Virus record (IMG/VR): IMGVR_UViG_3300034104_003795
Location: 124,001 to 188,000 of that record
Direction: 5' to 3' (one strand)
DNA: 64,000 nt
In this document: positions 1,937 to 47,503 of the stretch, piece after piece
Position numbering within the stretch: position 1 is the first letter of the stretch
Layout of the letters: each line of letters begins with the position of its first letter
The notes under the pieces: model-generated
The model's input: the letters and a program-made list of their open reading frames with translations, nothing else
Told to the model about the DNA's origin: nothing
Databases searched by the model: none
Program-made: the position numbers and the translations under genes

Positions 1937-1937
1937 A

Positions 1938-5525: not shown

Positions 5526-5526
5526 A

Positions 5527-6562: not shown

Positions 6563-6565
6563 TTG

Positions 6566-7162: not shown

Positions 7163-7164
7163 GT

Positions 7165-11218: not shown

Positions 11219-14200
11219 TTAATGCAATTGTACCCAAGCCCCATTCGCGTATCCCATAAATTTATGAGTAGTTGAATTGTATATCATATCTCCATTCGCA
11301 GGAGTTAAACTTCCAGTTTGTACATCAGTAAATGTTGCCATTCTCATTGGTGATTGCGTTACAATTACCGCAGTACCAGCTGTTAAGTTTAAGTTAGTTG
11401 CCGATGTTATTTCAGGTGTACCGGTTGCATATATGTTAAATCCAGATGCACTTATCGCACCACTAACAAACATAGAACCTGTTAGTTTCATTTCTGCTCC
11501 ATCGAATGTGAGAGTATTACTTACAAATAATCTTTCAGGTGAATTTTCGTATCTAACTAACCCATTATTTACACTTCCAGTTACAGCTAATAGGGATGCA
11601 ACTCCAGAAGTTCCAGATGTACCATTCGTACCAGATGTGCCATCAACACCACTTGTACCAGTCACACCAGATGTACCAGATGAACCAAATGCAGTACCGT
11701 CTAAACCATTTTTACCAGATGAACCAGACGTACCATCAGAACCATTTGCTCCAGGTGCACCATTTGTTCCAGATGTACCACCACTACCAGCAGTTGCTCC
11801 TGCTGCGGTTAAACCACTTGTACCAGAAGTTCCAGAGCTACCACTAGTACCCATAGTACCGTTTTCTCCATTTAATCCCGATGAACCAGATGAACCAATA
11901 AATGTTCCATCTTTACCAGATGTACCAGATGACCCAAAAAATCCAGATATACCAGATGTACCGGAAGTACCATCTGAACCATTTACACCAGATGTTCCAT
12001 CTTTACCAAATCCAGATGAACCAGATGTACCAGATGAACCAACAAATGTTCCATCTTTACCGGAAGTACCGGATGTACCATCTTTACCAGATGAACCTGC
12101 ACTACCCGCACCACCACCGGTTCCTGCGGTGATTGTTATATGTCCACTACCAGGTGTATTAGTTACAACCGCCCCACCGGTAAATGTTATTTGATTTACA
12201 CCACTAATAGATGTAGGTCCAACATCATCATTTATTGTTAATGCAATAGATGTACCAGAACTACCACTTGAACCGGATGTACCGGCTGTTCCACCTATAC
12301 CAGTTATTCCAGATGAGCCAGATGTACCATCGGTACCAGGTGCCCCAATACCATTAAGTCCAGATGTTCCAGATGAGCCATCTTTACCAGATGTACCAGA
12401 TGTACCGCCACTTCCACTTACTCCTGCGGTTCCAGATGAACCAGAAGTTCCACCACCACCATCTTTACCAGATGTACCAGAAGTACCATTTGAACCCCCA
12501 CCGCCTACACCACCGGCTACAGTAAGTGCAACGGTACCGCCACCACTATTCGTAGCACGAATTGTATTATCCAATGTTAATGTGGTTGTTGCAGCTGCGG
12601 AGAATGAACCACTATTAATTGTAAGTCCACCACCACCACCACCGGTTGTTATAGTTACTTGTCCGCCACCATCATCTGCAACAACGGCTCCATTGAATCG
12701 TATTGTACGAACTGAACCAAAAGAACTACCACCTTGTTGAGATACTGTTATCGCTCCAAATGAAGATGTAGCTATTATTCTAGATATATCATTAACTCCA
12801 CCAACCCAAGCATATCCTTGTGGAAGTGAAGCAGATAAAGGTCCACTTACTTGTAGAGAACCTGTAATTTGTATATTATTTGTTGTTGCGAATACCGAAC
12901 CGGTTGCCGCAAATATTCCAGTACCACTACCAGCACTACCAAATGAAGATGTTGCTACTAAAATTGTTCTATTATTAGGACCACCTACCCAAGCATATCC
13001 TTCTCTTAAAGATGAAGTAATTGAACCACTAATATTCAAATTTTTACCAAATGTAACATCAGCATCGTCAAATGCAACTGCTTCAAAGGTTCTAAAATGT
13101 AGTTCATGATAGAGATTACCAGCTTTTGTATAAAGTTCTCCTTTGGCATTAGTACTTTTATCAGTCCACAATATTGAAGAATTTTCTTCCTGTGCTCCTC
13201 TAGAATCAGAACCTAAATCTAAAATTTGAACGGTAGGACCATACAACATACCACCATATTGTGTTTTACCAATTCGTATAGAACCGGTAATATGCAGAGA
13301 ACCACTAATATGTGCAGAACCAGTATAAGGGAATACAGTTGTTGTTAAACCAGATGTTCCCGCAGTTCCACTTATTCCAGATGAACCAGATGAGCCAGAA
13401 GTTCCAGATGAACCAGAGCTTCCAGAAGTTCCTGATGAACCACTTGTACCATCTAAACCGGTTGTACCATCTTTACCGGATGTACCAGAAGACCCACTTG
13501 AACCAGATGTTCCAGAACTACCACTACTTCCAGATGTACCAGATGAACCAGAAGTTCCAGATGAACCAGAGCTTCCAGAAGTTCCAGATGAACCACTTTG
13601 ACCAGGTGCACCTGCCGTATTTATATACCATGAAGTTATACCAGTACCACTACCTGATGTAGTTGTTATATTAACCACTAAATCACCTGTACCGCTGTTA
13701 TAAGATGTTACAGTTCCTTCTAATACATTTGATGCATTTTCAGAAATAATAATAGCCTGTCCAGGAGTCCATTGTAATCCAGTTCCTATTGTGAAATTTT
13801 TAGAACCAGTGCTTATATTGTTTGAAGTACTCGATGTTGATGAGAATCTATCACCATTTTGTCCAGAAGTTCCAGATGAACCCGATGAACCAGATGTACC
13901 ATCTTTACCAGATGTACCAGATGAACCGCTACTACCAGATGTTCCAGATGAACCGGAAGTACCACTCTCTCCAGAAGTTCCAGATGAACCTGAACTTCCA
14001 GAAGTTCCAGAACTACCACTACTTCCTGATGTGCCATCTTTACCAGATGTACCAGAAGAACCGGATGTACCTGAACTTCCTGATGTGCCATCTTTACCGG
14101 AAGTACCAGAAGAACCACCACTACCAGCAGTACCAGCAGGTCCACTAGCTATTGAAGTTGTTTTTCCTATTGTTTTTGTAGAACTATTGTAAACTAATAC

Positions 14201-14470
14201 TTCACTTGCAACAGCATCGGTTGAAATATTATCAAATCTTAAACTACCAGAAATTAAAACACTACCAGTAAATTGTCCGCTTAATTGTCCACTTAAAGTT
14301 GATAGATTCGATACGGATGAAGATACTGATGTTAATGTTGAATTTAAATTATCAGTTGTTGTATATAATGTATTTACGGAACTTGATACGTTTTCTAAAA
14401 TCGTCAAGTTGGCATCCATTTCTGCCGCCGTTAAGGGACTACCCTTTGGTATTCTTTTTATTATTGCCAT
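11219..14470 (-). CDS. Gly/Ser/Thr-rich collagen-like fibre protein (probable virion fibre)
   Basis: Long Gly-X-Y runs (GTS GSS GKD) separated by repeated TGSxxITGS-type fibre segments; C-terminal GDMIYNSTTHKFMGY. Confidence 0.7.
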   Translation of the reverse strand: MAIIKRIPKGSPLTAAEMDANLTILENVSSSVNTLYTTTDNLNSTLTSVSSSVSNLSTLSGQLSGQFTGSVLISGSLRFDNISTDAVASEVLVYNSSTKTIGKTTSIASGPAGTAGSGGSSGTSGKDGTSGSSGTSGSSGTSGKDGTSGSSGSSGTSGSSGSSGTSGESGTSGSSGTSGSSGSSGTSGKDGTSGSSGSSGTSGQNGDRFSSTSSTSNNISTGSKNFTIGTGLQWTPGQAIIISENASNVLEGTVTSYNSGTGDLVVNITTTSGSGTGITSWYINTAGAPGQSGSSGTSGSSGSSGTSGSSGTSGSSGSSGTSGSSGSSGTSGKDGTTGLDGTSGSSGTSGSSGSSGTSGSSGSSGISGTAGTSGLTTTVFPYTGSAHISGSLHITGSIRIGKTQYGGMLYGPTVQILDLGSDSRGAQEENSSILWTDKSTNAKGELYTKAGNLYHELHFRTFEAVAFDDADVTFGKNLNISGSITSSLREGYAWVGGPNNRTILVATSSFGSAGSGTGIFAATGSVFATTNNIQITGSLQVSGPLSASLPQGYAWVGGVNDISRIIATSSFGAITVSQQGGSSFGSVRTIRFNGAVVADDGGGQVTITTGGGGGGLTINSGSFSAAATTTLTLDNTIRATNSGGGTVALTVAGGVGGGGSNGTSGTSGKDGGGGTSGSSGTAGVSGSGGTSGTSGKDGSSGTSGLNGIGAPGTDGTSGSSGITGIGGTAGTSGSSGSSGTSIALTINDDVGPTSISGVNQITFTGGAVVTNTPGSGHITITAGTGGGAGSAGSSGKDGTSGTSGKDGTFVGSSGTSGSSGFGKDGTSGVNGSDGTSGTSGISGFFGSSGTSGKDGTFIGSSGSSGLNGENGTMGTSGSSGTSGTSGLTAAGATAGSGGTSGTNGAPGANGSDGTSGSSGKNGLDGTAFGSSGTSGVTGTSGVDGTSGTNGTSGTSGVASLLAVTGSVNNGLVRYENSPERLFVSNTLTFDGAEMKLTGSMFVSGAISASGFNIYATGTPEITSATNLNLTAGTAVIVTQSPMRMATFTDVQTGSLTPANGDMIYNSTTHKFMGYANGAWVQLH
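11580..14130 (-). repeat. Degenerate 9-nt-period coding repeats (GTS/GSS/GKD triplets) in several blocks
   Basis: Recurrent plus-strand units such as ccagatgaa, ccagatgta and ccagaagtt, around 11.6-12.5, 13.35-13.6 and 13.86-14.13 kb. Confidence 0.85.
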
Positions 14471-16360: not shown

Positions 16361-17746
16361 TTATTTAATTTTGAACACTTCAAATCTTTTTCTTGGTTTC
16401 CAATTCTCAAACACATCTTCAATCCCATCTATTAATTGTTGGGCCATATTGATATGTGTTAATCCCGCTTCATTGATAAAAAACTCTCTACCAATTAATG
16501 CGTTTGCTTTTCTTTCTTCTTTTGGTGTATTGTATGATTTAGCAATTGCTTGTGCAACATCTTCTATATCAACTCTATCATCCCAAATATACGGTGTTGG
16601 TACTGAACCTGCTAATGCTTGTGCTCTACTCCATACCGGATACGCCCAAGGACCAGGTTCTGCTTTACCTTCCCATTTTCTCCATTCATGTAAAGAACCA
16701 ATCTTAATATAATCATCTGCAACCAATACATTACCTTCAACTTTAAATCCACATTGGTCTTGCAATCCACCGGTTACGTTTACAATGATTGGAGTTCCAG
16801 CCATTATCGATTCTGCGGTTGCTAATCCAAATCCTTCGTTGTTAGCAATATTGATTGTTACATCTGCTATATTATAGTTCCAATTCAATTCTTGTTGAAC
16901 TCTTCTTTTTTCAGAAAAACGGATATTAATACCAGGTGTAAGTTCTTCAATTACAGCATACAAGTCAGTTCCATTTTCATCAACAGGCTGTGTATGCATT
17001 AATAAAAGACATTTATCCGCTTTATCTTTACCAATAATCTCACAAAATCTTTTATATGCCATTATTACATCGGCCGGTTGTTTTCTGCGAATATTTCTAT
17101 TACTCCAATACAATACAAAATCATATTCTTTACCACCTAAAATTTCATTACGATATTCCGCAGGTACTTCGGTTGGTTTGTAGATATCAGTATTAATACC
17201 GTGTGGTACATACTTTACTTGCCAATCTTTTAGAGGTCTCCATGTTACTTTATCGGTTCTAGAAGTAATTCTTTTTATAATACCATATGTTTGTCTTGAT
17301 ATACATCCAATCCAATCACAACTTTCATAATAATCTCTATTATACATTGGGTCTGGTAAATCATCCCAAATTGCGTAGAAAAGAATTGGAATATTTTGTC
17401 TGATTTCGTGTTCGATATCATACAACCATGTCCAATAACGAGGGTCAGTAAAGTGTAAGATTGCATCTGGGTTTTCTGAATTAATAATCTGCCTTAACAA
17501 ATCAGCATTTCCATACCCATTCCAAGGAAGTATTTTTAAACTAGCATCTGCTACTCCATAATTTTTTTGTATATCTTCGCTAACATCCAAAACCTTACCT
17601 TGTTCAGGATGGTTAATTGCCGCTCCAACTTGATACCAATCGTATTTGTGTATCGTACCCAATACGAATTCTTTTGACATTGTGGCTATACCACTTGCCA
17701 TTCTTAAATCATCCGAAAGTAATAGGATTTTTTTCTTTTTTGCCAT
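16361..17746 (-). CDS. GT4-family glycosyltransferase
   Basis: NRNIRRK and NEGFGLATAESIMAGTPII..TGGLQDQ. Confidence 0.87.
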   Translation of the reverse strand: MAKKKKILLLSDDLRMASGIATMSKEFVLGTIHKYDWYQVGAAINHPEQGKVLDVSEDIQKNYGVADASLKILPWNGYGNADLLRQIINSENPDAILHFTDPRYWTWLYDIEHEIRQNIPILFYAIWDDLPDPMYNRDYYESCDWIGCISRQTYGIIKRITSRTDKVTWRPLKDWQVKYVPHGINTDIYKPTEVPAEYRNEILGGKEYDFVLYWSNRNIRRKQPADVIMAYKRFCEIIGKDKADKCLLLMHTQPVDENGTDLYAVIEELTPGINIRFSEKRRVQQELNWNYNIADVTINIANNEGFGLATAESIMAGTPIIVNVTGGLQDQCGFKVEGNVLVADDYIKIGSLHEWRKWEGKAEPGPWAYPVWSRAQALAGSVPTPYIWDDRVDIEDVAQAIAKSYNTPKEERKANALIGREFFINEAGLTHINMAQQLIDGIEDVFENWKPRKRFEVFKIK

Positions 17747-18900: not shown

Positions 18901-18932
18901 TAAAGATACGAAAAAATGGTGATATTACCAAA
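18901..18932 (-). promoter_or_regulatory. Bacteroidota-type promoter (variant -7)
   Basis: TTTG-N20-TATCTTTA upstream of the nuclease gene. Confidence 0.5.
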
Positions 18933-21488: not shown

Positions 21489-21519
21489 CAAATATACGAA
21501 AAAAAGTTTAGAATTCAAA
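21489..21519 (-). promoter_or_regulatory. Bacteroidota-type -33/-7 promoter
   Basis: TTTG-N19-TATATTTG, overlapping the polB stop. Confidence 0.6.
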
Positions 21520-24060
21520 AAACTTTTTTGCGTTTTGTGATTCTACCGATGCCATTTCCCATTTGAGAGCACCGAAGAAATCATTTAGTTTATTTTCTAA
21601 TTCTGCTTTATATATTTCATCTCTATCTATGTATTTATCAATGAAATCCAATACATCCTTTGGGTCATTATAATCTTTGAATGCCAAAGTATCTATTCCC
21701 AATGGATTACTTTTAAGATATACCCATTTAACTTTTTCACCATCTCTAATAGGTTCATGTTTAAACGGACATTCAAAGAATTTAAGTAATCTATTATAAG
21801 CAATTCCAGCCTTAACGTGTGCAGGTGTTCCTTTCTCAAAATTAGCAATCGCCAATCCACTATCTTTTCTCCACTTACCTTTATCGTATTTACTCAATTC
21901 TTTAATAGCTCCACCTTTTGCGATTTTATTTATCGGAAGTGTATAGATACTCTTTTTAAATTCTAAAAGAGATTCATTTATTTCTTCATTGGTTTTACCC
22001 ATTAGAATGTCTTTTAACATTTTAGCCATAAACTCCTGAAATGCTTTTGGAAACGATGAACGTACTACATCCAATCCTTTTACATCCAATTTATCGCAAG
22101 GAATTCCATTCTTCAAAATCATCCATTGTGCGTATCGCTTCTTTGCTACCCAAAATCCTGCTTTACTGATATACTCTTTCTTAATCTCAAAGCGGTGTTT
22201 CTCTTTTGGAATACAAAAGAATCTTTCCGCTAGTAAGTTATAAAATGAATTTAAAAATGCTTGAGTTTCTTCTGCAACGATATTAACTTCGGATGCCATT
22301 CTAGTTTGGTCAAATGTTTTATATTCAGGATACCTAAATTTAACCAAAGGTTCTGCCATCATATAAATTGAATCAGTATCAATGTAAACATTATAATCGT
22401 CTTTTGTACCCAACTCTTTTTGGTATTTAAGATTTGCCATTTCGGCAGTTTTCTTAATTACAGTTTGACCGGTAATCGTTACTGCTTCTGCATTATCAAT
22501 ATCATAGAATCTAAATGCAACAAGTCCTAACACACCATACATTGAGTTCAAAAGAATCTTTTGTACCAACTGCCTCTTACCATAGAATTCATATTTTTCA
22601 GTATCACCCGCCTCACCATACTTCTTCTCCAACTTTCTGAACTCAACCCTTTGTTTAAACCAAGTATCTAAAATATCTGCAATCAAACCAGGTTTCTTTT
22701 GTGTATATAACACACCATTTGCAGCAACACCTAATTGATTATCTCTAATTACTTCTTCTAATTCTTTTCTATTATATGTAAACTCTTTTGTTTTACCAAC
22801 AATCGTATATTGTCTATCTTCACCCCTAACCCAAGATTCAGGATCCCAATTTGAAATCTTACCAACCTTTGTTTCAGGTGAGATATTTAAGGTCATAATG
22901 ATTGATGGATATAGAGATGTTAAGTCCAAGTCATAAATCCAATCATACTTACCAACAATTGGTTCTTTAACATATGCCCCAATAAATTTTTCTTCACCAG
23001 CTTCAGCCTGTTCTGCAAGTTTATCTTTGTGATTCTTTGGTTTATTAGGTGCTACCAATCCTTTCTTTTTAAGATAAGCTAAACAAGCTCCTTCCAAATA
23101 CTTTGATGAGAAAATGTAATCTTCATATGGTGTAAATCCAGAATGACAAATCGCTCTACTTAATTCAATAAATTGAAGTTTGGTATCCATTGATACCACC
23201 AACTCAACGTCAGTAATGTTATATTCAATAAATTTTTCTAAATCATCCTCAAATAAGTCATCCAAACTTCCCTCATATTCAACCTTACCTCTACCCAATT
23301 CTTTCATAGCGATATGATTAAGAGTATATGAACTCTCTAAACCAAAGTTGTATCGTTTATACAAACCGATATAGTCCATAATACTCACACCCGCAATACT
23401 ATAACGATTACGATAAGGTGACCAATATGTTTTACCTATACAAGATAAACGATTGGCTTGATTTTCCCCACATACATTCTTAATACGATTATAAAGATAT
23501 GGAACGTCAAAGAAATCAATATTCCATCCCGTCCAAATCGTTGCGTTTACACTTTCAACATAAGTTAAGTATTTCATCAACAATTCACGCTCACTACCAA
23601 AGATATGAACATGCACATCTCTACCATCTTTTTGAAACGATTTACCGTTTACCTTACCTTTTTTATCTACAACGAATACATGATACTCTTTTGTGGCATC
23701 ATCATACGCTGCTATTGAAGTAATTTCGTTTTCGGCTTTTTCAATGTTTGGAAGTCCTGTTATCATTTCTACCTCAATGTCAAAAGTTAAAACAATATGA
23801 CCTTTAGATGGAGTATCATCCCCATATAGGTCTACTAATACTCTGGTGGTTTCCGGTACATCTGATTCAAATAATTCCTCACCACTATCCTTTTCCCATT
23901 TAAATACTTTACTTAAACGGTCACCATGCATAGATTGATATTCCCCATTTGGGTCTTTAACATATGCATATTTTTTATATGGAAATGTGCGATACCCTAA
24001 AGTGTCATCCCACAAATGAATTAAGTTTCTATTTCTTTCAAAGAAAATGTTTTGATACAT
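21508..24060 (-). CDS. polB: Family B DNA polymerase (T4 gp43-like)
   Basis: Exonuclease motifs FDIEV, GWNIDFFD and YNITDVE; polymerase motifs DLTSLYPSII, KILLNSMYG and YIDTDS; no intein apparent. Confidence 0.97.
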   Translation of the reverse strand: MYQNIFFERNRNLIHLWDDTLGYRTFPYKKYAYVKDPNGEYQSMHGDRLSKVFKWEKDSGEELFESDVPETTRVLVDLYGDDTPSKGHIVLTFDIEVEMITGLPNIEKAENEITSIAAYDDATKEYHVFVVDKKGKVNGKSFQKDGRDVHVHIFGSERELLMKYLTYVESVNATIWTGWNIDFFDVPYLYNRIKNVCGENQANRLSCIGKTYWSPYRNRYSIAGVSIMDYIGLYKRYNFGLESSYTLNHIAMKELGRGKVEYEGSLDDLFEDDLEKFIEYNITDVELVVSMDTKLQFIELSRAICHSGFTPYEDYIFSSKYLEGACLAYLKKKGLVAPNKPKNHKDKLAEQAEAGEEKFIGAYVKEPIVGKYDWIYDLDLTSLYPSIIMTLNISPETKVGKISNWDPESWVRGEDRQYTIVGKTKEFTYNRKELEEVIRDNQLGVAANGVLYTQKKPGLIADILDTWFKQRVEFRKLEKKYGEAGDTEKYEFYGKRQLVQKILLNSMYGVLGLVAFRFYDIDNAEAVTITGQTVIKKTAEMANLKYQKELGTKDDYNVYIDTDSIYMMAEPLVKFRYPEYKTFDQTRMASEVNIVAEETQAFLNSFYNLLAERFFCIPKEKHRFEIKKEYISKAGFWVAKKRYAQWMILKNGIPCDKLDVKGLDVVRSSFPKAFQEFMAKMLKDILMGKTNEEINESLLEFKKSIYTLPINKIAKGGAIKELSKYDKGKWRKDSGLAIANFEKGTPAHVKAGIAYNRLLKFFECPFKHEPIRDGEKVKWVYLKSNPLGIDTLAFKDYNDPKDVLDFIDKYIDRDEIYKAELENKLNDFFGALKWEMASVESQNAKKFFEF

Positions 24061-24068
24061 CTATTATG

Positions 24069-25640
24069 TTATGGTTTATAAAATATAAAAATTGGTTCGT
24101 ACTTATAAAATTGCCCTTCAATCTGCATACAATTTTTCGCTTTAGATAAATCCATTCCCGTCATTGGACTCATTGTCATTCTTAATTTGCCTTTATACTC
24201 ACATCCCAATTGTGTAAGTATATCAATACTATCTTGCTCCAATGGATAAAACTTATCAGGACCAACTTTAATATCTGCAATATTCCAACATACATAACGG
24301 TCATTACGAAGATACTCATATATAGTTTCTAATGTTGGTCTTAAAAATCCATCTCTCCAACTTTCATAGTTACCAAATTTCTTAAATGATTGTGTATCAT
24401 CATCAGAATATCGTTCTCTATCAAAGTATGGCGGAGAAGTAAATGCAAAATCTAATTTACCTTTATACTTTTGAAATCTCGGGTCATCTTTAATAATTTC
24501 AGAACCAGTTGTAAAGATTTCGTATGTATTAGCGTGTCCCCAAAAAGGATTAGCTGCACCCGGTACTTTATTATTAAAGAACTCCGCAAGATACTCATAG
24601 CGAGTCTTACCGATTTCTGAAATGTAGTTTTCGGTATTAGGGTCATTTCCTATGTAATGGATATTTCTATCATCAAGACTTAATGCTCCTAATATTCTAC
24701 CACCCCAACCCGCTGATGGGTCATAGATGTTAATTACATCTTGTTTTTTAATATGTTCCGTAAATCTTTTATAAAGATATTTTGCAGTAAGTGGTGGGAA
24801 GTTTACAACCGCCTGTGTACCCATACCGATACGAAATGCAGCAGTTGCTTCAGGAAATATTCTTTGTCCTAATGGGTATATCTTAATCTGAATTGGTTGT
24901 TTTGGAACATCAACTAAATTATCAATATTCTCACCCCAATCCGCAGTTTTTAATGAAGATATGTTTTCATACTTCAATATACCAGCTGCATAAAGGTCTT
25001 TAACTTCTTGTGCAGTAATTGGCGGTGATGGAACTTTGCTATCCGCTTGTGATAAACAAAATCCATATCCTTCTTTCTTATTACCCGCTGCCCATTTTTC
25101 AATCCACTCTTTACCACTTTGGATATGTGAATTATGAAATTCTGGATTATCTAAATGTAAGGTTTTAGAAAAACGATACATACCATCTTGCCTAGTTAAT
25201 CTTCTCATTTGTTTTACAAACTCTGTCAAATAGGCATCATCTGCGAATACATCGTAGATTGATGGTTTTGGCTTATCATAAGCCGAACCACCGATTCCCG
25301 TCTTATACATCGCAGGAAAGAATTGATTAACTGGTGTTGCAAACTTATTGAAGTTAAAGATGACTTCGTTTCCGTCATCATCTTTTTCTTCAAACTTTTC
25401 TACTTTGTAAGTTTGTAGTTTAGAAAATTGTTCAATCATTTCACCTTCATCAACACCGATTCTCGGTGGTGCTCCGGTTTCATTCCAAACTCTTACTGCG
25501 AGTTCTCTAAAAAATGCCACCCACCTTTCAAAATCGGCGAATGGCATTTTAAGAACATCTTCATATAATAAGTTCACTTCCGGTTCGTACAACCAGTCAT
25601 TCTTTTCGTAGAAATATTTCTTTTTGTAATTAAAACTCAT
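24069..25640 (-). CDS. Amino-methyltransferase-fold (N4/N6 DNA MTase-like) protein 1
   Basis: YDPSAGWGGR (motif I) and FTSPPYF (motif IV); long N-terminal extension. Confidence 0.8.
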   Translation of the reverse strand: MSFNYKKKYFYEKNDWLYEPEVNLLYEDVLKMPFADFERWVAFFRELAVRVWNETGAPPRIGVDEGEMIEQFSKLQTYKVEKFEEKDDDGNEVIFNFNKFATPVNQFFPAMYKTGIGGSAYDKPKPSIYDVFADDAYLTEFVKQMRRLTRQDGMYRFSKTLHLDNPEFHNSHIQSGKEWIEKWAAGNKKEGYGFCLSQADSKVPSPPITAQEVKDLYAAGILKYENISSLKTADWGENIDNLVDVPKQPIQIKIYPLGQRIFPEATAAFRIGMGTQAVVNFPPLTAKYLYKRFTEHIKKQDVINIYDPSAGWGGRILGALSLDDRNIHYIGNDPNTENYISEIGKTRYEYLAEFFNNKVPGAANPFWGHANTYEIFTTGSEIIKDDPRFQKYKGKLDFAFTSPPYFDRERYSDDDTQSFKKFGNYESWRDGFLRPTLETIYEYLRNDRYVCWNIADIKVGPDKFYPLEQDSIDILTQLGCEYKGKLRMTMSPMTGMDLSKAKNCMQIEGQFYKYEPIFIFYKP

Positions 25641-26359
25641 TATGCAGTTAATTGTTGTTCTACTAGGTAATATTTTGCAGTGAAATCATCAATTTTAAAT
25701 TCAACGTGCGAAATACCTTGTGTTGATACTTTAAGTACAACCGCAGTTGCCTCTTTATTTGCAGTTAAGATTTCTTTCAAATACTTTGCTGAGAAAGAAA
25801 TTGGTTTAACATCACCTGCATATGCTTTATCAACTACGAACACAACTCTATTTGAGTTAATATTTGAATAACCCAATACAACTTTTAATTCTTTCTTTTC
25901 AGTAAGAATAGTAAATGTATCAACATCACTCAATGCGTTTTTAGCTTTGATAAATTTATCAATAAACGCACCATCAAAATTAATATCAACATCAAAATCA
26001 GGAAGTTTTTTCAAATCTGGTACATTTGGAATAACTGCCAAATCTGCCAATTGAAACTGAACCTTTGTGTTTTCGCTTTTAACGAAAAGGTTTACAGCTT
26101 TACCTTCAATTTCTTGTGCTTCCAACTCAATATCTTCACCAACTACCGAAAGTAATTTTGATAATGCTGATGTTGTGTACACTCCTAAATCAGGTGCACT
26201 AAATGTGAAATTATCTAATTGAATTTCACCCAATACAGTTTTGTCATCGGATATGAAACGAGTAACTAATTTGTTATCTTCCGTTTTCCATGCAACTGAT
26301 TCTACTAATCCACCCAAACTATACTTTTGGATAAATCTTGTTAATTTTGCTTTGTTCAT
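25640..26359 (-). CDS. Sliding clamp (T4 gp45-like)
   Basis: 239 aa with a two-domain clamp-like pattern, in the PolB / clamp-loader neighbourhood. Confidence 0.7.
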   Translation of the reverse strand: MNKAKLTRFIQKYSLGGLVESVAWKTEDNKLVTRFISDDKTVLGEIQLDNFTFSAPDLGVYTTSALSKLLSVVGEDIELEAQEIEGKAVNLFVKSENTKVQFQLADLAVIPNVPDLKKLPDFDVDINFDGAFIDKFIKAKNALSDVDTFTILTEKKELKVVLGYSNINSNRVVFVVDKAYAGDVKPISFSAKYLKEILTANKEATAVVLKVSTQGISHVEFKIDDFTAKYYLVEQQLTA

Positions 26360-26391
26360 TTTGTTTATGTTTAAATTTTAAATTGTGAATA

Positions 26392-26423
26392 CAAATATAC
26401 GATATTTTATTGAATCTACCAAA
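26392..26423 (-). promoter_or_regulatory. Bacteroidota-type -33/-7 promoter for clamp-MTase1-polB
   Basis: TTTG-N20-TATATTTG. Confidence 0.7.
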
Positions 26424-26424
26424 T

Positions 26425-27639
26425 TTATTTTTCCCAAATCCATATTGGTTCTCCAAATGCGTGGTTTTTTGTTTCTTCAGCCTTTTCCTTCAATTCATCG
26501 GAGTAATATTCCGATACAGCCATCCCAGCACCCCCACTATTGGGTCTTTTTGTCATTTCCATACCAATACACCCTTTATAAATTAACCCTCTGGATTGAA
26601 GGAAATCGTTCATAGAATTAACTATGTCCACATACCCCTTATCAGGTGCGGAAAATACATCCGCAATATTGATTGCCAGTATTCCACCTTTTTTTAAGGT
26701 TGGTATAATTTTGTCTAATGTTGTATGAAAGAACCCTTTGTTCCAATCATCAAACTTTTTATATCTAATCCAACTTTGAGTATCATCAAAGCTGTATCTT
26801 TCCGTATTAAAATACGGTGGTGAAGTAAAGATTGTATCAAAGAAGTTTTCATACTCTGAATAATCTACATCTTCAGCCGCCGCTTGTAACATCTTTGCAT
26901 CTTTATCTTCTTCAAAGAATGTTGTATGTTTTTTATAGAACTCAATTTGTTTTTGATAGTTAGGATGATTACTACTATTTGGGTCAATACCTAAATAAAA
27001 CTTTGTTGTTTCTCCTGCAAAGAATCCAGCTAAACGGTCACCCCATCCTGCTGAAAAATCCATAACATTTTTACTTTGAAACTTATCATAGAATGCTTTT
27101 GCAATAACAGGTTTAAATTGTGATGCAACATACTTTCTTAATGTAGTTGCCATTTTAAGAGTTTCCAAATTTACATCCAATAACATTTTATCCAAAGTAA
27201 AGTATGCTCTTACGATTGTTTTAATACCTTCTACCGTTTGCCAAGTTTTCCAACCCGATGGTGTTCTAACCCAATCAACCTTCCAACGATTTTCTATATG
27301 AAATGGATTGGATGCATTATTACCTACATTAGTTCTTCTAAAATAATATTCAGAACCATCATAAGTTAATGGATACTTTGATACTCTTTCATTACGTGGA
27401 AACCATTTACCTTCTACTAAAATATCAGGCCACCAAGTTCCTTTTAATTTTTTATAAGCATCTAACGTATCTTCTTCTGTGATAGTTGGTATTGGTGGTG
27501 GGTATGTATGCAATACTTCTGAAAGTTCATCTATGATTTCTTTTTTCGTATAAGTTTTGAGAATAGTTTGCCATTCGTCTTTTTCAATACGAAGATACGG
27601 CTCCATCCCATAAAATTTTTTGAAGTATTCTTTTATCAT
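26425..27639 (-). CDS. Amino-methyltransferase-fold protein 2
   Basis: DFSAGWGDR and FTSPPYF; start trimmed to MIKEYF. Confidence 0.8.
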   Translation of the reverse strand: MIKEYFKKFYGMEPYLRIEKDEWQTILKTYTKKEIIDELSEVLHTYPPPIPTITEEDTLDAYKKLKGTWWPDILVEGKWFPRNERVSKYPLTYDGSEYYFRRTNVGNNASNPFHIENRWKVDWVRTPSGWKTWQTVEGIKTIVRAYFTLDKMLLDVNLETLKMATTLRKYVASQFKPVIAKAFYDKFQSKNVMDFSAGWGDRLAGFFAGETTKFYLGIDPNSSNHPNYQKQIEFYKKHTTFFEEDKDAKMLQAAAEDVDYSEYENFFDTIFTSPPYFNTERYSFDDTQSWIRYKKFDDWNKGFFHTTLDKIIPTLKKGGILAINIADVFSAPDKGYVDIVNSMNDFLQSRGLIYKGCIGMEMTKRPNSGGAGMAVSEYYSDELKEKAEETKNHAFGEPIWIWEK

Positions 27640-28865
27640 AATTTTTTCCAAATCCAAATAGGTTCACAAAATGTTTTATCACCGGCTTCTTCCGCCTTTT
27701 TCAAAGCTTCTTCGCTATATCTTTCCTCATCTCCTTCTATGATAGAACCCGCTCCAGCACTACCAGGTCTTTTCGCCATTTCCATTCCCAAACATCCTTC
27801 GTATTCTGCACCTAATGTTTGAATAAAATCATTCATTGGATTACATATCTCTTTATAACCTTTACCATCTCCTTTGGAACTTGCATATACATCTGCAATA
27901 TTAACTGCGAGGATACCACCTTTCTTTAAAGTAGGCCAAACGTTTGCAATTGTTTTATGTAAAAACTCTTTATTCCAAGCATCAATATTTTTATATCTAA
28001 CCCAACTTTGAGTATCATCGTAAGAATATCTCTCTACGTTGAAATACGGTGGTGAACTAAATACAATATCAAAGTGCTCTTTATATTGAGTTAAATCTGC
28101 ATCTTCCGCCGGTGATTCTATAAAATCAGCTTTCTTTTCAGTTTCAAAGAATGAATTGTGTTTAGTATAGAATTCCGCCTGTTTACGATATATTGGATGA
28201 TTTTCTTTTCTAGGGTCTATTCCTACATAATGTTCACCATTTTCAGATGCAAAGAATCCACATAATCTATCACCCCATCCCGCTGATATATCTAATACAT
28301 TTTTAGCTCCATAAAAATCATACAATACTTTTGCTGCATTTGGTTTAAATTGAGAACAAATATATTTTCTCAAACTTAAACACACTCTTAATTGGTTTCT
28401 ACCAACTTCATCAAATTTAAGAGTATATAACCCACCCATTAGAGTTGTCATAAATTCTTTACTTGCCCAAGTTCTAGAAGGTCCAGGTGATACCGTTCCA
28501 TCTACACTCCAACGATTTGCTTGTTGAAAATGATTTGATGCATCATTTCCGGTATTTAATCTACGAATGTATTGTGGTTTACCTTGAAAATCTAAAGAGT
28601 ATCTAAAATCTGATGCCTTTCTTGGAAACCATTCACCTTCGGTAAATAATTCATTCCAACGAATACCTTTTAATGCAAGATATTCTTTTCTAGCATCATC
28701 TTCACTTATTTCAGCAAAAGGCAATTCGTATGCCATACACACTTCTGCTAATGATTCTTTAACATCATTAACATCAAATGTTTTTTTAATATAAGTCCAT
28801 TCTTCTGAATTTATATATAGGTATGGCTGCATACCTTTAAATTTATCAAAATATTCTAAATACAT
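27636..28865 (-). CDS. Amino-methyltransferase-fold protein 3
   Basis: DISAGWGDR and FSSPPYF; clear paralog of 26425..27639. Confidence 0.8.
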   Translation of the reverse strand: MYLEYFDKFKGMQPYLYINSEEWTYIKKTFDVNDVKESLAEVCMAYELPFAEISEDDARKEYLALKGIRWNELFTEGEWFPRKASDFRYSLDFQGKPQYIRRLNTGNDASNHFQQANRWSVDGTVSPGPSRTWASKEFMTTLMGGLYTLKFDEVGRNQLRVCLSLRKYICSQFKPNAAKVLYDFYGAKNVLDISAGWGDRLCGFFASENGEHYVGIDPRKENHPIYRKQAEFYTKHNSFFETEKKADFIESPAEDADLTQYKEHFDIVFSSPPYFNVERYSYDDTQSWVRYKNIDAWNKEFLHKTIANVWPTLKKGGILAVNIADVYASSKGDGKGYKEICNPMNDFIQTLGAEYEGCLGMEMAKRPGSAGAGSIIEGDEERYSEEALKKAEEAGDKTFCEPIWIWKKL

Positions 28866-29377
28866 ACTGTTTCTATATTTTTGTTTGCAACCAATCTCAA
28901 TCTGAATACTATACCATTTATAACTCCGTCTTTTTTACTAGTCCAAGTTATATCACTATCTTTTACAAAACCATATCTCTCATAAAATAATACGGCTCTA
29001 TAATTGAATGCCCTAACGGTTAAGAATAGATTCTCTGCATGTTGTGATTTACAATATTCTACAAACTCATCTAATACTTCTTTTGAAGCATTTGTTTTAG
29101 AGTGATTTGTTGCAATTTGATGAAGAATATAATCTCCTTTCTTTTTATATGTAGTAGCATTTTTACTCATTCTACCATGAGATTTATATTTTCCAAAAGT
29201 GATAACAACACCGTCTTGCAGTATCATACCACCCTTTTCAATATACTTTTCCAACTTAAAGCCTTGCTTATATAAGTGTGGAAATATTTCAGGATACAAA
29301 TCAATAATAGTTGAAGCCTGATTTACAGCTTCAATCATTTCAGTTGTACCTTTTTCAGCTTTTACAAAATTAAGCAT
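28856..29377 (-). CDS. GNAT-family acyltransferase
   Basis: LHQIA...LFLTVRAFNYRAVLFYERYGF C-terminal GNAT signature; the CoA-binding loop looks degenerate. Confidence 0.75.
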   Translation of the reverse strand: MLNFVKAEKGTTEMIEAVNQASTIIDLYPEIFPHLYKQGFKLEKYIEKGGMILQDGVVITFGKYKSHGRMSKNATTYKKKGDYILHQIATNHSKTNASKEVLDEFVEYCKSQHAENLFLTVRAFNYRAVLFYERYGFVKDSDITWTSKKDGVINGIVFRLRLVANKNIETVCI

Positions 29378-30827
29378 ATTGAAAGAATTTATTTAAGTTT
29401 AGTTCGTCTTTATACAAATATAAGGATTTTAATTGAGATTTCAAAATATCTTTTTTAGCTTCCATCATATCACCTGTCCTACATCCTTTTGCGAAGTAAA
29501 CTTTAGGTCTATATAATAGTTCATCGGAAATCTCACCTTTGAATGCAGCTCTTAATAGTGGTTTCATATGTCCACCTTCTTTTTGATATAATGGTGGAAT
29601 ATTTAAAGTATATTCAACAAACGGTCTCCAACTATACGGAGTTCTTACCTCAACGGTTCCACCCCACATAATAGATTGGTTTGTTGTTAAGAAGTTTGTC
29701 TTATGTACATCTTCTACTAATTTTCTTCTGGCCTTATCGTAATCTTCGGGTTTGTAATGGAACGCTTGAATGTGCCCATAACTACCCCATATCTCATCGG
29801 ATAGGTCACCACTAAATACAACTTTGAATCCTAACTCATTTATCTTTTTAGATAGTGCTATTTGTGCAATTGCACTACCAACGTTTTGCCATCTACCTTG
29901 CTCAATAACATAAAGAGTTTCTTTAACCGCATCTTCAACATCCTGTTCGGTTAAAATAATTTCATGCAATTTTACTCCAAATTCTTTTGCAGCAATTCTA
30001 GCATATTTTATATCATCATTTTTAGTATCACCATCACCCATTGATACAACGAATGCTTCAATATCAGGTTTAATTTTAGAAAGAATATATGTAGTGATAA
30101 CGGAATCAATACCACCGCTAAGAATAGTACAAATAGGAACATCTGATACCATCTTAACTTTTACAGCTTCTTCCAACATTGTTCTAATATTCGTAACGAT
30201 AGTTTCTCTATCATCATTTATTATTTCATTTGGAAGTTTATAATAAGTTTGCGTTGAATGTTCTAATGTTTTATAGTTGTATTCTAAATAAGTTCCTGGA
30301 TAAATTGCCTTTACTTGCTTTTCATAAAGTTCTGATATTGGTAATCCTTTCTTTTCAGAACAAAATACCATCTTACCATCGTTATCAATTGCATACCATA
30401 AAGGTAACTCACCAACGTAATCTCTAACTACAAATATTTTATTAATTTTGGTATCAACTATTGCAAATGAAAACATCCCATCCAAATCTTTGAATGAATC
30501 AGTTCCAAATTCACAATAAGCATTAAGAATTATTTCAGTATCAGATTTTGTTTTAAATGGAATTGTAATTTTATCTTTTAATTCTTTTGTGTAATTACTA
30601 TCCCATAACTCTCCATTATATACAATACATACAGTCTTATCGCCATTCCACATTGGTTGGTTTGCTGTTGAAGATAAATCTTGAATTGAAAGACGATTGT
30701 GTCCAACAAAGACACTGTCTATCTCGTCTACAATAGAAGCATCTCTACCTCTATGAATTATTTTTTGTAAATGGGTATGGGTCTGCTTACTAGAAGTAAA
30801 CCAATTACCGCCTATTATTCCACACAT
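29370..30827 (-). CDS. Asparagine-synthetase-B-like glutamine amidotransferase (Ntn + PP-loop)
   Basis: MCGIIG N-terminal Cys, HRGRD, HNRLSI, YNGELW, SDTE, LSGGIDS and EVRTPY. Confidence 0.9.
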   Translation of the reverse strand: MCGIIGGNWFTSSKQTHTHLQKIIHRGRDASIVDEIDSVFVGHNRLSIQDLSSTANQPMWNGDKTVCIVYNGELWDSNYTKELKDKITIPFKTKSDTEIILNAYCEFGTDSFKDLDGMFSFAIVDTKINKIFVVRDYVGELPLWYAIDNDGKMVFCSEKKGLPISELYEKQVKAIYPGTYLEYNYKTLEHSTQTYYKLPNEIINDDRETIVTNIRTMLEEAVKVKMVSDVPICTILSGGIDSVITTYILSKIKPDIEAFVVSMGDGDTKNDDIKYARIAAKEFGVKLHEIILTEQDVEDAVKETLYVIEQGRWQNVGSAIAQIALSKKINELGFKVVFSGDLSDEIWGSYGHIQAFHYKPEDYDKARRKLVEDVHKTNFLTTNQSIMWGGTVEVRTPYSWRPFVEYTLNIPPLYQKEGGHMKPLLRAAFKGEISDELLYRPKVYFAKGCRTGDMMEAKKDILKSQLKSLYLYKDELNLNKFFQYA

Positions 30828-30831
30828 ATAA

Positions 30832-30863
30832 CAAATTTACGAAACTTTTTGGATATTACCAAA
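30832..30863 (-). promoter_or_regulatory. Bacteroidota-type promoter heading the AsnB-GNAT-MTase operon
   Basis: TTTG-N20-TAAATTTG, only 4 nt before the ATG at 30827. Confidence 0.7.
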
Positions 30864-30864
30864 T

Positions 30865-31134
30865 TTATTTTATAGCATCATTAATAGCATTTGTATATGC
30901 TACTTTAGCTGCTAAACCTTGAAATCTTTCTAAAACTACACCATCTTTTTCAATTATTACTAATGGAATAGATGTAACATTATATTGTACCGATTCTTCT
31001 GGAGAATTATCAACATCATATTCAACGAATGTTGCTTTACCTTCAAACTCTTTTTTAATTCCCTCTAATACAGGTGCCAATGCTCTACAAGGACCACACC
31101 ACGCTGCCCCAAATTTTTTAACTACTACACTCAT
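30865..31134 (-). CDS. trxA: Thioredoxin
   Basis: WCGPC active site and SIP cis-proline motif. Confidence 0.95.
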   Translation of the reverse strand: MSVVVKKFGAAWCGPCRALAPVLEGIKKEFEGKATFVEYDVDNSPEESVQYNVTSIPLVIIEKDGVVLERFQGLAAKVAYTNAINDAIK

Positions 31135-35011: not shown

Positions 35012-35043
35012 CAAATATACAACAATTTAGTGATACCACCAAA
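35012..35043 (-). promoter_or_regulatory. Bacteroidota-type -33/-7 promoter
   Basis: TTTG-N20-TATATTTG upstream of the helicase. Confidence 0.7.
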
Positions 35044-38248: not shown

Positions 38249-38280
38249 CAAATATACGATAAATTTGTGACAATACCAAA
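38249..38280 (-). promoter_or_regulatory. Bacteroidota-type promoter (distal of a tandem pair)
   Basis: TTTG-N20-TATATTTG. Confidence 0.7.
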
Positions 38281-39226: not shown

Positions 39227-39258
39227 TAAATATACGATTTTTTTATAAATCTACCAAA
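39227..39258 (-). promoter_or_regulatory. Composite promoter: host-type (variant -7) overlapping the ATATTTAT motif
   Basis: TTTG-N20-TATATTTA, with ATATTTAT at 39226..39233. Confidence 0.55.
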
Positions 39259-45443: not shown

Positions 45444-45481
45444 ATTATAGCATATTTTTGTATATAATATAAATATGACTG

Positions 45482-47018: not shown

Positions 47019-47050
47019 CAAATATACGAAAAAATCCCCAAATTACCAAA
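47019..47050 (-). promoter_or_regulatory. Bacteroidota-type -33/-7 promoter
   Basis: TTTG-N20-TATATTTG. Confidence 0.7.
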
Positions 47051-47471: not shown

Positions 47472-47503
47472 TAAATATACGAATAATAATTTAGATTACC
47501 AAA
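47472..47503 (-). promoter_or_regulatory. Promoter for tmRNA (variant -7)
   Basis: TTTG-N20-TATATTTA, 11 nt upstream of the mature 5' end. Confidence 0.6.

What the first reader, a model, noticed from the sequence alone, without database searches (positions are those of the whole stretch)
24069..30863. Candidate DNA hypermodification operon: AsnB-like amidotransferase + GNAT + three SPPY-type methyltransferase-fold paralogs inside the replisome cluster
Seen: a dedicated promoter (30832..30863) drives AsnB-like, GNAT, MTase3 and MTase2, whose reading frames overlap in a chain. A third paralog is fused start-to-stop behind the sliding clamp and sits 8 nt before polB. All three have D.SAGWG.R and SPPYF motifs plus large N-terminal extensions. 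Established: SPPY-type folds modify exocyclic amines of A or C. A GNAT-fold enzyme (Mu Mom) hypermodifies adenine. AsnB-type enzymes amidate carboxylates using ATP and glutamine. Inference: free asparagine synthesis makes little sense in this position. The genes more plausibly build a multi-step base modification: a SAM-derived group (methyl, carboxymethyl or aminocarboxypropyl), then amidation and acylation, to resist restriction or CRISPR. I know of no described pathway with this exact gene set.
Basis: partly seen in the sequence, partly recalled or inferred. Interest (0 to 1): 0.82.

Follow-up and report, generated by a model that had tools for sequence, protein, structure and literature searches.

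The report
Phage DNA-modification operon with amidotransferase
A lake-water cyanophage carries, inside its DNA-replication genes, a promoter-driven operon that most likely builds a new elaborate chemical decoration on its own DNA, but no chemistry has been measured yet.

Summary
The described sequence features are all present: the gene chain AsnB-like, GNAT, MT3, MT2, then clamp, MT1, polB, with the stated overlaps and motifs. The proposed promoter is one of nine copies of a strand-specific motif.

- The AsnB-like protein is not a canonical asparagine synthetase. It falls in a well-supported clade with glutamine-type CmoY-like ligases, whose glycine-using member was shown to amidate carboxymethyl-cytosine in phage DNA. 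It shares that clade's D384N change.
- Relatives at 38-51% identity sit beside members of the same SPPY methyltransferase-fold family in three further unrelated contexts. None of 73 generic AsnB-like loci do.
- No Cx-SAM synthase (CmoA) or C5-methylase accompanies these systems.
- The GNAT shows no similarity to Mom.
- MT3 is a core gene, more conserved than polB, and often occurs without AsnB and GNAT, so these two are optional tailoring enzymes.

Best reading: MT3 puts a carboxyl-bearing, SAM-derived group on a base's exocyclic amine. AsnB then amidates it and GNAT acetylates it. The chemistry is inferred, not shown. This is a new variant of the CmoX/CmoY kind of DNA hypermodification.

The parts
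30833..30862 (-). Promoter-like motif (TTGGTA-N15-TCGTAAATTT) in the 37-nt gap between the thioredoxin gene and the AsnB-like gene
   Evidence: One of 9 strand-specific copies against 0.08 expected by chance. Conserved at the same place in L001-L017.
29370..30827 (-). AsnB-like glutamine-dependent amidotransferase / AMP-forming amide ligase (485 aa). Cys2 nucleophile, SGGIDS PP-loop and K449 equivalent are kept. E348D, D384N and R387T relative to E. coli AsnB.
   Evidence: Clade membership. Contexts of relatives.
28856..29377 (-). GNAT-fold acyltransferase (173 aa), always paired with this AsnB subclade
   Evidence: Pfam/NCBIfam weak GNAT and RimI-like matches. 34 of 34 co-occurrence with the close AsnB. 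Paired again in L098 and L136. No similarity to Mom.
27636..28865 (-). MT3: core member of a virus-only SPPY methyltransferase-fold family (409 aa). It has a novel N-terminal domain plus a Rossmann domain with motif I before motif IV.
   Evidence: More conserved than polB.
26425..27657 (-). MT2: paralog of MT3 (51% identity), present in only a subset of relatives
26393..26422 (-). Second copy of the promoter-like motif, upstream of the clamp gene. It starts the next unit (clamp, MT1, polB).
25640..26359 (-). PCNA-like sliding clamp (context gene)
   Evidence: PCNA_C, weak. Synteny.
24069..25640 (-). MT1: third, more divergent paralog (30% to MT3, 523 aa, longer N-terminus). Its start overlaps the clamp stop, and it ends 8 nt before polB.
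21508..24060 (-). Family B DNA polymerase (context gene)

Best explanation
This is a replication-coupled DNA base hypermodification module of a freshwater cyanomyovirus.

Shown by comparison: the AsnB-like enzyme belongs to the clade of CmoY-type amide ligases that act on carboxylated DNA bases. It is recurrently encoded next to one virus-specific family of SPPY methyltransferase-fold enzymes.

Inferred mechanism:
1. MT3 is the conserved core enzyme. It uses SAM to put a carboxyl-bearing group on an exocyclic amine of a base. The SPPY motif points to cytosine N4, less likely adenine N6 or guanine N2.
2. No Cx-SAM synthase accompanies these systems. The variable partner enzymes are a GNAT, an ACC-deaminase-like PLP enzyme, a 2-hydroxyacid-dehydrogenase fusion and an aminoacyl-tRNA-transferase-like protein. 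All of these handle alpha-amino-acid head groups. The group is therefore most simply the 3-amino-3-carboxypropyl (acp) moiety of SAM itself.
3. The AsnB-like enzyme adenylates the carboxylate and converts it to a carboxamide with glutamine-derived ammonia. The GNAT acetylates the amine. The result is a neutral, capped side chain.
4. MT2 and MT1 are paralogs that probably widen the sequence contexts or bases covered.

The likely purpose is protection of phage DNA from host nucleases.
For: 1. Tree of 106 AsnB-family proteins. The window protein lies in a 41-tip clade (SH-like support 1.0) with Streptomyces phage TurkishDelight gp124 and with P0294, an 818-aa fusion of a C5 DNA methylase with GATase and Asn_synthase domains. 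The clade is separate from the E. coli AsnB clade.
2. Signature residues. E. coli D384 is Asn in 39 of 41 clade members, but Asp in 15 of 15 canonical AsnB. D384 (human D400) is part of the pocket that binds the aspartate amino group (PMC6748925).
3. TurkishDelight gp124 sits in the order ParB, ParB, C5-methylase (GSPPC), AsnB-like, CmoA-like. Ten of the 12 best cellular-genome relatives are flanked by CmoX-like and CmoA-like genes. CmoY, an AsnB homolog, was shown to amidate 5-carboxymethylcytosine in DNA (PMC12783734).
4. Linkage to the SPPY family. AsnB and GNAT lie directly upstream of MT3 in 34 loci with at least three different surrounding gene orders. AsnB relatives at 51%, 45% and 38% identity (L098, L099/L100, L103) again lie within 0-2 genes of an SPPY-family member. 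None of 73 generic AsnB-like loci (650 kb) do.
5. The GNAT-AsnB pair recurs in L098 and L136.
6. The slot beside MT3 holds alternative tailoring sets in relatives: a ThyA-like gene (best PDB match CMP hydroxymethylase), AsnB' and an ACC-deaminase-like PLP enzyme.
7. The operon has its own conserved promoter-like motif.
8. MT3 is 62-66% identical across relatives where polB is 36-49%, which fits a core function.
Against: - There is no biochemical or sequencing-signal evidence for any modification.
- MT3 occurs without a nearby AsnB or GNAT in about 30 of 80 loci, including 24 with clamp directly followed by MT3. The partnership is therefore optional, and adjacency could partly reflect a recombination hot spot.
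- AsnB is 90% identical between lineages whose polB is 57% identical, so it behaves as a mobile cassette.
- The AsnB-like protein passes the TIGR01536 asparagine-synthase cut-off and keeps D351, E352 and K449.
- Nothing in the MT sequences or model distinguishes methyl, carboxymethyl and acp transfer. Foldseek finds only generic methyltransferases in the PDB.
- The annotations of the PLP, 2-hydroxyacid-dehydrogenase and aminoacyl-tRNA-transferase-like partners are below curated thresholds.
- About 24 kb of the 134-kb contig was not examined for CmoA.
- That the target is DNA, rather than nucleotides or RNA, is inferred from context only.
Confidence: 0.5

Rival explanations
1. Carboxymethyl version. 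The SPPY enzymes use carboxy-SAM, made by the host or by a CmoA elsewhere in the genome, to N-carboxymethylate a base. The AsnB-like enzyme converts it to N-carbamoylmethyl. This would be a Mom-like end product reached by a CmoX/CmoY-like route. The GNAT would have a separate role.
For: Direct precedent: CmoA/CmoX/CmoY, and the authors' prediction that GATase-bearing CmoY homologs use glutamine-derived ammonia (PMC12783734). The window AsnB is in the same clade as those homologs. An invariant Arg (R200) follows motif I, and an invariant E-x-Y-S loop follows SPPYF; either could bind an extra carboxylate.
Against: No CmoA-like or C5-methylase gene in the window, in 80 related loci, or in L098, L099 and L103, nor in the examined parts (about 110 kb) of the 134-kb contig. 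In CmoX systems, CmoA is adjacent. Cyanophage S-B43 carries its own CmoA, which suggests cyanobacterial hosts do not supply Cx-SAM. A carbamoylmethyl group leaves the GNAT and PLP partners without a substrate.
Confidence: 0.15
2. Ordinary explanation. MT1-3 are orphan m4C or m6A DNA methyltransferases that protect against restriction. AsnB and GNAT are an unrelated auxiliary metabolic cassette (asparagine synthesis and an acetyltransferase) that happens to sit in a hyperplastic slot.
For: SPPY motif, marginal PF01555 matches, and automatic 'N4-cytosine methylase' names for relatives. AsnB passes the TIGR01536 cut-off. The AsnB cassette is horizontally mobile. MT3 is often found alone. Some phages and giant viruses carry asnB-like genes in other contexts, for example the S-SCSM1 glycosyltransferase cluster.
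Against: The AsnB clade is separate from canonical AsnB, carries D384N, and in the window subclade also carries R387T and E348D. AsnB is repeatedly linked to the SPPY family in unrelated contexts, against 0 of 73 controls. Clade relatives are fused to or flanked by DNA methylases. MT3 is more conserved than polB, which is unusual for an anti-restriction methylase.
Confidence: 0.15
3. The SPPY-family enzymes act before replication on nucleotides, or on RNA or protein, rather than on DNA. AsnB and GNAT tailor that small-molecule or RNA product.
For: Very high conservation, typical of small-molecule enzymes. Relatives are placed among nucleotide-metabolism genes, for example in a Vibrio phage next to dCMP deaminase, DHFR and ThyA. 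The top PDB fold matches are RNA and small-molecule methyltransferases. The N-terminal domain has no DNA-binding fold match.
Against: The CmoY precedent acts on DNA. The genes sit between the clamp and polB. The family is related to N4/N6 DNA methylases around motif IV.
Confidence: 0.12
4. AsnB and GNAT serve glycan chemistry, as PseA- and PseH-like enzymes forming acetamidino or N-acetyl sugars, for the phage's large sugar-nucleotide gene cluster.
For: The window and contig carry a large sugar cluster: UDP-GlcNAc 2-epimerase, nucleotidyltransferases, glycosyltransferases and an FkbM methylase. The L098 GNAT has a weak PseH match.
Against: The pair lies about 20 kb from the sugar cluster and always directly upstream of MT3. 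The AsnB clade is linked to DNA methylases.
Confidence: 0.04

Closest known systems
CmoA/CmoX/CmoY cytosine carboxymethylation and amide-ligation pathway of Synechococcus phage S-B43 (PMC12783734)
   Same: A methyltransferase-fold enzyme is encoded next to an asparagine-synthetase homolog that amidates a carboxyl handle on a DNA base. The window AsnB-like protein is in the same well-supported clade as the GATase-bearing CmoY homologs (TurkishDelight gp124, fusion protein P0294). The host range (cyanophage) is similar.
   Different: The transferase here is an SPPY amino-methyltransferase-like protein with a novel N-terminal domain, not a C5 methylase with SPPC and R350. No CmoA is present. A GNAT is an added constant partner. 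There are three transferase paralogs. The amine donor would be glutamine-derived ammonia, a variant that has not yet been shown biochemically even for CmoY.
Asparagine synthetase B (E. coli AsnB, human ASNS)
   Same: Two-domain architecture with an N-terminal Cys glutaminase and a PP-loop synthetase. About 30% identity over the full length. D351, E352 and K449 are kept.
   Different: Shorter (485 aa against 554 aa). D384N, R387T and E348D. Separate clade. Different genomic partners.
Mom of phage Mu (GNAT fold, Gly-tRNA-dependent adenine N6 modification; PMC13219725)
   Same: A GNAT-fold protein in a phage that may decorate a base's exocyclic amine. The possible end product resembles a carbamoyl-alkyl adduct.
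   Different: No sequence similarity (E = 9.8). Mom works alone, without a methyltransferase or an amidotransferase. The window GNAT resembles RimI-type N-alpha-acetyltransferases.
N4-cytosine / N6-adenine DNA methyltransferases (PF01555 and relatives)
   Same: Motif IV is SPPY(F) and the downstream region is similar. The Rossmann SAM-binding motifs I-III are present.
   Different: Motif I comes before motif IV, whereas PF01555 enzymes are permuted. Scores are at or below the Pfam threshold. The family has a hallmark loop F[ST]SPPYFxxExYSx[DE][DE][TN]Q and an invariant Arg after motif I. It has a large novel N-terminal domain, is found only in viruses, and is more conserved than polB.
Thymidine hypermodification pathways (5-hmdU kinase, aGPT-Pplase, PLP enzymes; PMC5889632, PMC8989533)
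   Same: The logic is a core installing step followed by variable tailoring enzymes that act on an appended amino-acid-like group, including PLP enzymes. Relatives carry a ThyA-like hydroxymethylase homolog beside AsnB'.
   Different: No 5-HMUDK or aGPT-Pplase homolog was seen. The window phage has no ThyA-like gene.

Membership tests
CmoA/CmoX/CmoY system | AsnB-homologous AMP-forming ligase (CmoY) encoded beside the transferase | tested here: met
   The AsnB-like gene lies two genes upstream of MT3. It is in the same clade (support 1.0) as the GATase-type CmoY homologs TurkishDelight gp124 and P0294.
CmoA/CmoX/CmoY system | CmoX: C5-cytosine methylase fold with SPPC motif and R350 | tested here: not met
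   MT1-3 have SPPYF and no PF00145 match. tblastn with TurkishDelight CmoX finds nothing in the window or the related loci.
CmoA/CmoX/CmoY system | CmoA carboxy-SAM synthase in the same genome or cluster | tested here: not met
   No homolog in the window, the 80 loci, L098, L099 or L103, or in the examined parts (about 110 kb) of the contig. About 24 kb remains unexamined.
Asparagine synthetase B (EC 6.3.5.4) | N-terminal Cys nucleophile, glutaminase residues and SGGxDS PP-loop | tested here: met
   MCGIIG, R49/N74/E76/D98 equivalents and SGGIDS are present.
Asparagine synthetase B (EC 6.3.5.4) | Conserved synthetase-site residues E348, D384 and R387 (human E364, D400, R403) | tested here: not met
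   The window protein has D, N and T at these positions. Their roles are taken from PMC6748925.
Asparagine synthetase B (EC 6.3.5.4) | Curated model cut-offs | tested here: inconclusive
   TIGR01536: 283.7 bits against a cut-off of 267.1 (passes). NF006949 AsnB equivalog: 285.9 against 499 (fails).
N4/N6 amino DNA methyltransferases (PF01555) | Motif IV (S/D/N)PP(Y/F) plus a SAM-binding motif I | tested here: met
   SPPYF and DxSAGWGxR are invariant in MT1-3 and in distant relatives.
N4/N6 amino DNA methyltransferases (PF01555) | Pfam gathering score and the family's motif order (IV before I) | tested here: not met
   Scores against the 26.7 cut-off: MT2 27.6, MT3 24.8, MT1 19.3. Only profile positions 2-61 match. 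Motif I comes before motif IV.
N4/N6 amino DNA methyltransferases (PF01555) | Methyl transfer to DNA | not testable with these tools
   Needs an enzyme assay or nucleoside mass spectrometry.
Mom-type DNA-modifying GNAT | Sequence or structure relationship to Mu Mom, with catalytic R111 and S124 | tested here: not met
   BLASTP of the window GNAT against Mu Mom gives E = 9.8. The best PDB sequence matches are N-alpha-acetyltransferases.
7-deazaguanine DNA modification (DpdA, QueC/D/E, FolE) | DpdA transglycosylase plus preQ0 pathway genes | tested here: not met
   Only a GTP cyclohydrolase I was found on the contig. No TGT, QueC, QueD or QueE was seen in the scanned ORFs. A more distant AsnB-like gene sits in such a cluster in phage Motura.

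The most novel reading that the evidence does not exclude
The SPPY family, with MT3 as prototype, is not a methyltransferase family. It is a family of SAM-dependent 3-amino-3-carboxypropyl transferases acting on an exocyclic amine of a DNA base. In this phage the appended amino-acid head group is then N-acetylated by the GNAT and amidated by the AsnB-like enzyme. In relatives it is deaminated, reduced or aminoacylated instead. This would be the first acp-type DNA modification. It would be carried by an abundant clade of freshwater and marine cyanophages, with homologs in giant viruses.
Probability: 0.25. Interest if true: 0.9.

Novelty: new variant of a known kind. Interest (0 to 1): 0.72.

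Why it matters
- It would extend the newly found 'carboxyl handle plus AsnB-type amide ligase' logic of phage DNA hypermodification. The known case is C5 of cytosine with a dedicated Cx-SAM synthase. The new case would be an exocyclic-amine transferase family that needs no extra cofactor enzyme.
- It would assign a function to a very abundant virus-only protein family: 2,894 proteins at 90% clustering, more conserved than the DNA polymerase, and with structural relatives in giant viruses.
- Such modifications affect restriction and CRISPR escape and the sequencing of environmental viruses, and they can supply new DNA-labelling enzymes.
- The operon is small enough (3-4 genes) to test directly in E. 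coli.

Tried and rejected
- Megablast of 13 kb against GenBank phages found no match. The closest cultured relative by polB is Microcystis phage Mel-JY01 (48%). It did not appear among the MT3 tblastn matches.
- Sequence and profile searches of MT3 against the PDB gave nothing useful. Foldseek of the full model found only generic Rossmann methyltransferases. The N-terminal domain modelled alone (pLDDT 74) has no PDB match.
- Mom homology of the GNAT was rejected.
- A CmoA or CmoX homolog in the window or loci was not found.
- The 7-deazaguanine pathway was rejected, because only FolE is present.
- The generic sigma-70 scan did not flag the proposed promoter. A motif search replaced it.
- Contig walking: two look-ups failed, probably because the called genes have non-ATG starts, and one window gene was not on record. 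About 24 kb of the 134-kb contig was not read.
- Metatranscriptome contigs touch the clamp, MT2, MT3 and AsnB only in fragments. They prove neither an operon nor expression. All DNA runs are held as contigs, so no modification signal could be sought.
- IMG/VR searches with P0242, P0244 and P0248 found no relatives.
- My recollection of AsnB residues T322, T323 and R325 did not map cleanly onto the numbering used, so they were left out of the argument.

Full report
**What is there.** All genes in the window lie on the minus strand. The finding's region reads, in the direction of transcription:
- thioredoxin-like gene (30865-31134)
- a 37-nt gap
- AsnB-like (29370-30827, 485 aa)
- GNAT (28856-29377, 173 aa)
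- MT3 (27636-28865, 409 aa)
- MT2 (26425-27657, 410 aa)
- a 65-nt gap
- PCNA-like clamp (25640-26359)
- MT1 (24069-25640, 523 aa)
- family B polymerase (21508-24060)

Around this stretch lie a class II ribonucleotide reductase, DnaB, a 5'-3' exonuclease, RecA, a gp32-like protein, clamp-loader subunits, dUTPase and a PD-(D/E)XK nuclease. The 'inside the replisome cluster' description is therefore correct. The three MTs share D-x-SAGWG-x-R and SPPYF.

**Promoter.** The generic sigma-70 scan did not list the proposed site. When I listed the intergenic gaps, a recurring sequence stood out. The pattern TTGGT-N14-17-YGTWWMTTT occurs 9 times in the window. All copies are on the coding strand, and 0.08 are expected by chance. 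One copy is at 30833-30862 in front of AsnB, one at 26393-26422 in front of the clamp, and one in front of DnaB. Close relatives keep the motif at the same three places. No transcript data of useful quality exist.

**Whose genome.**
- There is no nucleotide match among GenBank phages.
- The nearest cultured polB is that of Microcystis phage Mel-JY01 (48%), followed by T4-like cyanophages.
- The window has a tail sheath, a T4-like baseplate and tube proteins.
- The source contig is 134,411 bp and comes from lake water. It also carries heme oxygenase and a bilin reductase.

This is a freshwater cyanomyovirus-like phage.

**The MT family.**
- MT3 has 2,894 relatives in the 90%-clustered protein collection, all unnamed or auto-named, and 218 relatives in IMG/VR.
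- Across 80 fetched loci, MT3 is 62-66% identical where polB is 36-49% and the clamp is 40-47%. MT3 is a core gene, not a mobile restriction-modification methylase.
- MT2 is present in a subset of loci. MT1 is more divergent.
- The AlphaFold model (pLDDT 86) shows a Rossmann domain with motifs I, II, III and IV in the unpermuted order, and a 170-residue N-terminal domain.
- The PDB gives only generic methyltransferase matches. The N-terminal domain has no match.
- In the viral structure library, full-length matches (TM 0.6-0.7) are giant-virus proteins, including one 699-aa protein named glutathione synthase. The ESM Atlas shows a virus-only family.
- Distant members share a hallmark: DxSxG[WF]GxR, then F[ST]SPPYFxxExYSx[DE][DE][TN]Q, then NIxD, then EPI.
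- SPPY is typical of enzymes that act on exocyclic amino groups, most often cytosine N4 (established knowledge).

**The AsnB-like enzyme.**
- It keeps the Cys nucleophile, the glutaminase residues, the PP-loop and the K449 equivalent.
- It differs from E. coli AsnB at E348 (D), D384 (N) and R387 (T). The corresponding human residues E364, D400 and R403 are conserved active-site residues of asparagine synthetases, and D400 helps bind the amino group (PMC6748925).
- A search of 1.8 billion cluster representatives and a tree of 106 sequences place it in a 41-member clade (support 1.0) separate from canonical AsnB. In that clade, D384N is found in 39 of 41 members, against 0 of 15 in the canonical clade.
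- The same clade holds Streptomyces phage TurkishDelight gp124, which sits between a GSPPC C5-methylase and a CmoA-like methyltransferase behind two ParB genes. It also holds P0294, a single 818-aa protein that fuses a C5 DNA methylase to the GATase and Asn_synthase domains.
- In cellular genomes, 10 of the 12 best relatives are flanked by CmoX-like and CmoA-like genes.
- This is the system described in 2025 (PMC12783734). CmoA makes carboxy-SAM, CmoX carboxymethylates cytosine C5 in DNA, and the AsnB homolog CmoY ligates the carboxyl group to glycine. The authors predicted that the GATase-bearing subgroup uses glutamine-derived ammonia.
- A more distant AsnB-like gene in Achromobacter phage Motura sits in the order QueC, AsnB-like, DpdA, QueE, FolE.

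Phage AsnB-likes of this kind are DNA-modification enzymes.

**Linkage to the SPPY family.**
- Within the window's phage clade, AsnB and GNAT lie directly upstream of MT3 in 34 loci. This holds even though the surrounding order differs: Trx-AsnB-GNAT-MT3-(MT2)-clamp-MT1-polB in some loci, and polB-clamp-x-AsnB-GNAT-MT3-(MT2) in others.
- Outside that clade, three AsnB relatives were checked:
  - P0242 (51% identity): GNAT and AsnB abut a convergent 421-aa SPPY-family gene (L098).
  - P0244 (45%): a 420-aa SPPY-family gene lies two genes upstream (L099/L100).
  - P0248 (38%): a 436-aa SPPY-family gene lies two small genes downstream (L103).
- As a control, 73 loci with generic AsnB-like genes (650 kb) contain no SPPY-family gene.
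- None of these contexts has a CmoA-like gene.

**Limits of the linkage.**
- MT3 stands directly after the clamp, with no AsnB within 10 kb, in 24 loci.
- Other relatives carry different neighbours. One set is a ThyA-like protein (best PDB match CMP 5-hydroxymethylase, with Asp at the cytosine-specifying position), a second AsnB type and an ACC-deaminase-like PLP enzyme. Others carry only a PLP-enzyme-like protein.
- AsnB is 90% identical between lineages whose polB is 57% identical, so it moves as a cassette.

AsnB and GNAT are therefore optional tailoring genes that dock beside a conserved core enzyme.

**The GNAT.** It always accompanies this AsnB subclade (34 of 34 loci; also L098 and L136). 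It shows no similarity to Mu Mom. Mom is now known to use Gly-tRNA (PMC13219725). The GNAT's weak matches are to RimI-type N-alpha-acetyltransferases.

**Mechanism.**
- Shown: clade membership of AsnB, its altered site, its recurrent linkage to the SPPY family, and the operon layout.
- Inferred: the SPPY enzyme installs a group that bears a carboxylate. AsnB adenylates that carboxylate and amidates it with ammonia from glutamine. The GNAT acetylates an amine.
- Why acp: CmoA is never present. The alternative partners are a GNAT, a PLP enzyme, a 2-hydroxyacid-dehydrogenase fused to AsnB in P0245 and an MprF-C-like protein in L099. All of these act on alpha-amino-acid head groups. The simplest donor is therefore the 3-amino-3-carboxypropyl part of SAM itself. 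I hold this specific chemistry at about one in four.
- Rivals: carboxymethyl from host carboxy-SAM, or plain methylation with an unrelated AsnB-GNAT cassette.

**Verdict.** The closest known system is CmoA/CmoX/CmoY, and this is a new variant of it: a different transferase family, no CmoA and an added GNAT. It is a strong, cheaply testable lead in an abundant group of environmental phages.

Noticed in passing
window 47074-47460 (-): A phage-encoded tmRNA (ARAGORN, tag peptide ending ...ADLAVAA; Rfam RF00023, 83 bits). It is flanked on both sides by copies of the promoter-like motif (47020-47049 and 47473-47502).
   Followed up: partly
window 3406-3435, 18902-18931, 26393-26422, 30833-30862, 35013-35042, 38250-38279, 39228-39257, 47020-47049, 47473-47502 (all -): Nine copies of a bipartite motif, TTGGT(A)-N14-17-YGTATATTT, in front of replication and early-type genes. 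It is probably the phage's early or middle promoter. It is conserved in close relatives.
   Followed up: partly
window 4335-5525 (-), within 560-9549: A RuBisCO large-subunit-like protein (396 aa). Its best NCBIfam matches are type III RuBisCO and MtnW enolase, both far below their cut-offs. It is embedded in a sugar-nucleotide cluster: a HAD-nucleotidyltransferase fusion, UDP-GlcNAc 2-epimerase, a nucleotidyltransferase and two GT2 glycosyltransferases. If it worked in methylthioadenosine salvage, it would fit an MTA-producing transferase, but its sugar context argues for another role.
   Followed up: partly
L024:12465-15928, L052:5216-8248, L030, L031, L051, L055: Relatives carry an alternative module beside MT3: a short ThyA-like protein (CMP-hydroxymethylase-like, catalytic Cys kept, Asp at the cytosine-specifying site), a second AsnB type that keeps E348 and R387, and an ACC-deaminase / D-cysteine-desulfhydrase-like PLP enzyme with the PLP lysine aligned.
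   Followed up: partly
L012-L014, L019-L021, L032-L042 compared with the window: Class II RNR and AsnB are about 90% identical between lineages whose polB is 57-77% identical. Some relatives instead have class I RNR (L024:6674-9482). This points to module exchange within the replication region.
   Followed up: no
same contig outside the window: L092/L094 (contig 102-132 kb): Ribosomal protein S21, an APS-kinase-like protein and an AAA_33 kinase, a SET-domain protein, GTP cyclohydrolase I, NifU and Fe-S assembly proteins, heme oxygenase and a ferredoxin-dependent bilin reductase. The last two point to a cyanobacterial host.
   Followed up: no
window 11219-14470 (-): A 1083-aa tail-fibre-like protein with collagen-like repeats, lying in the most G+C-rich stretch of the window (0.37-0.42 against about 0.32).
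   Followed up: no
window 16361-17746 (-) and 44838-45509 (-): A GT4 glycosyltransferase that matches the 'conflict systems' GT4 family sits just downstream of the replisome genes. A non-specific DNA/RNA endonuclease (Endonuclease_NS) could degrade unmodified host DNA.
   Followed up: no
BFVD hit A0A3G5AD75 (Satyrvirus): A 699-aa giant-virus protein named 'glutathione synthase' aligns structurally with full-length MT3 (TM 0.65 on the query). If it is an ATP-grasp ligase fused to this fold, that would be independent support for a carboxylate-bearing product. The sequence could not be fetched to check.
   Followed up: no
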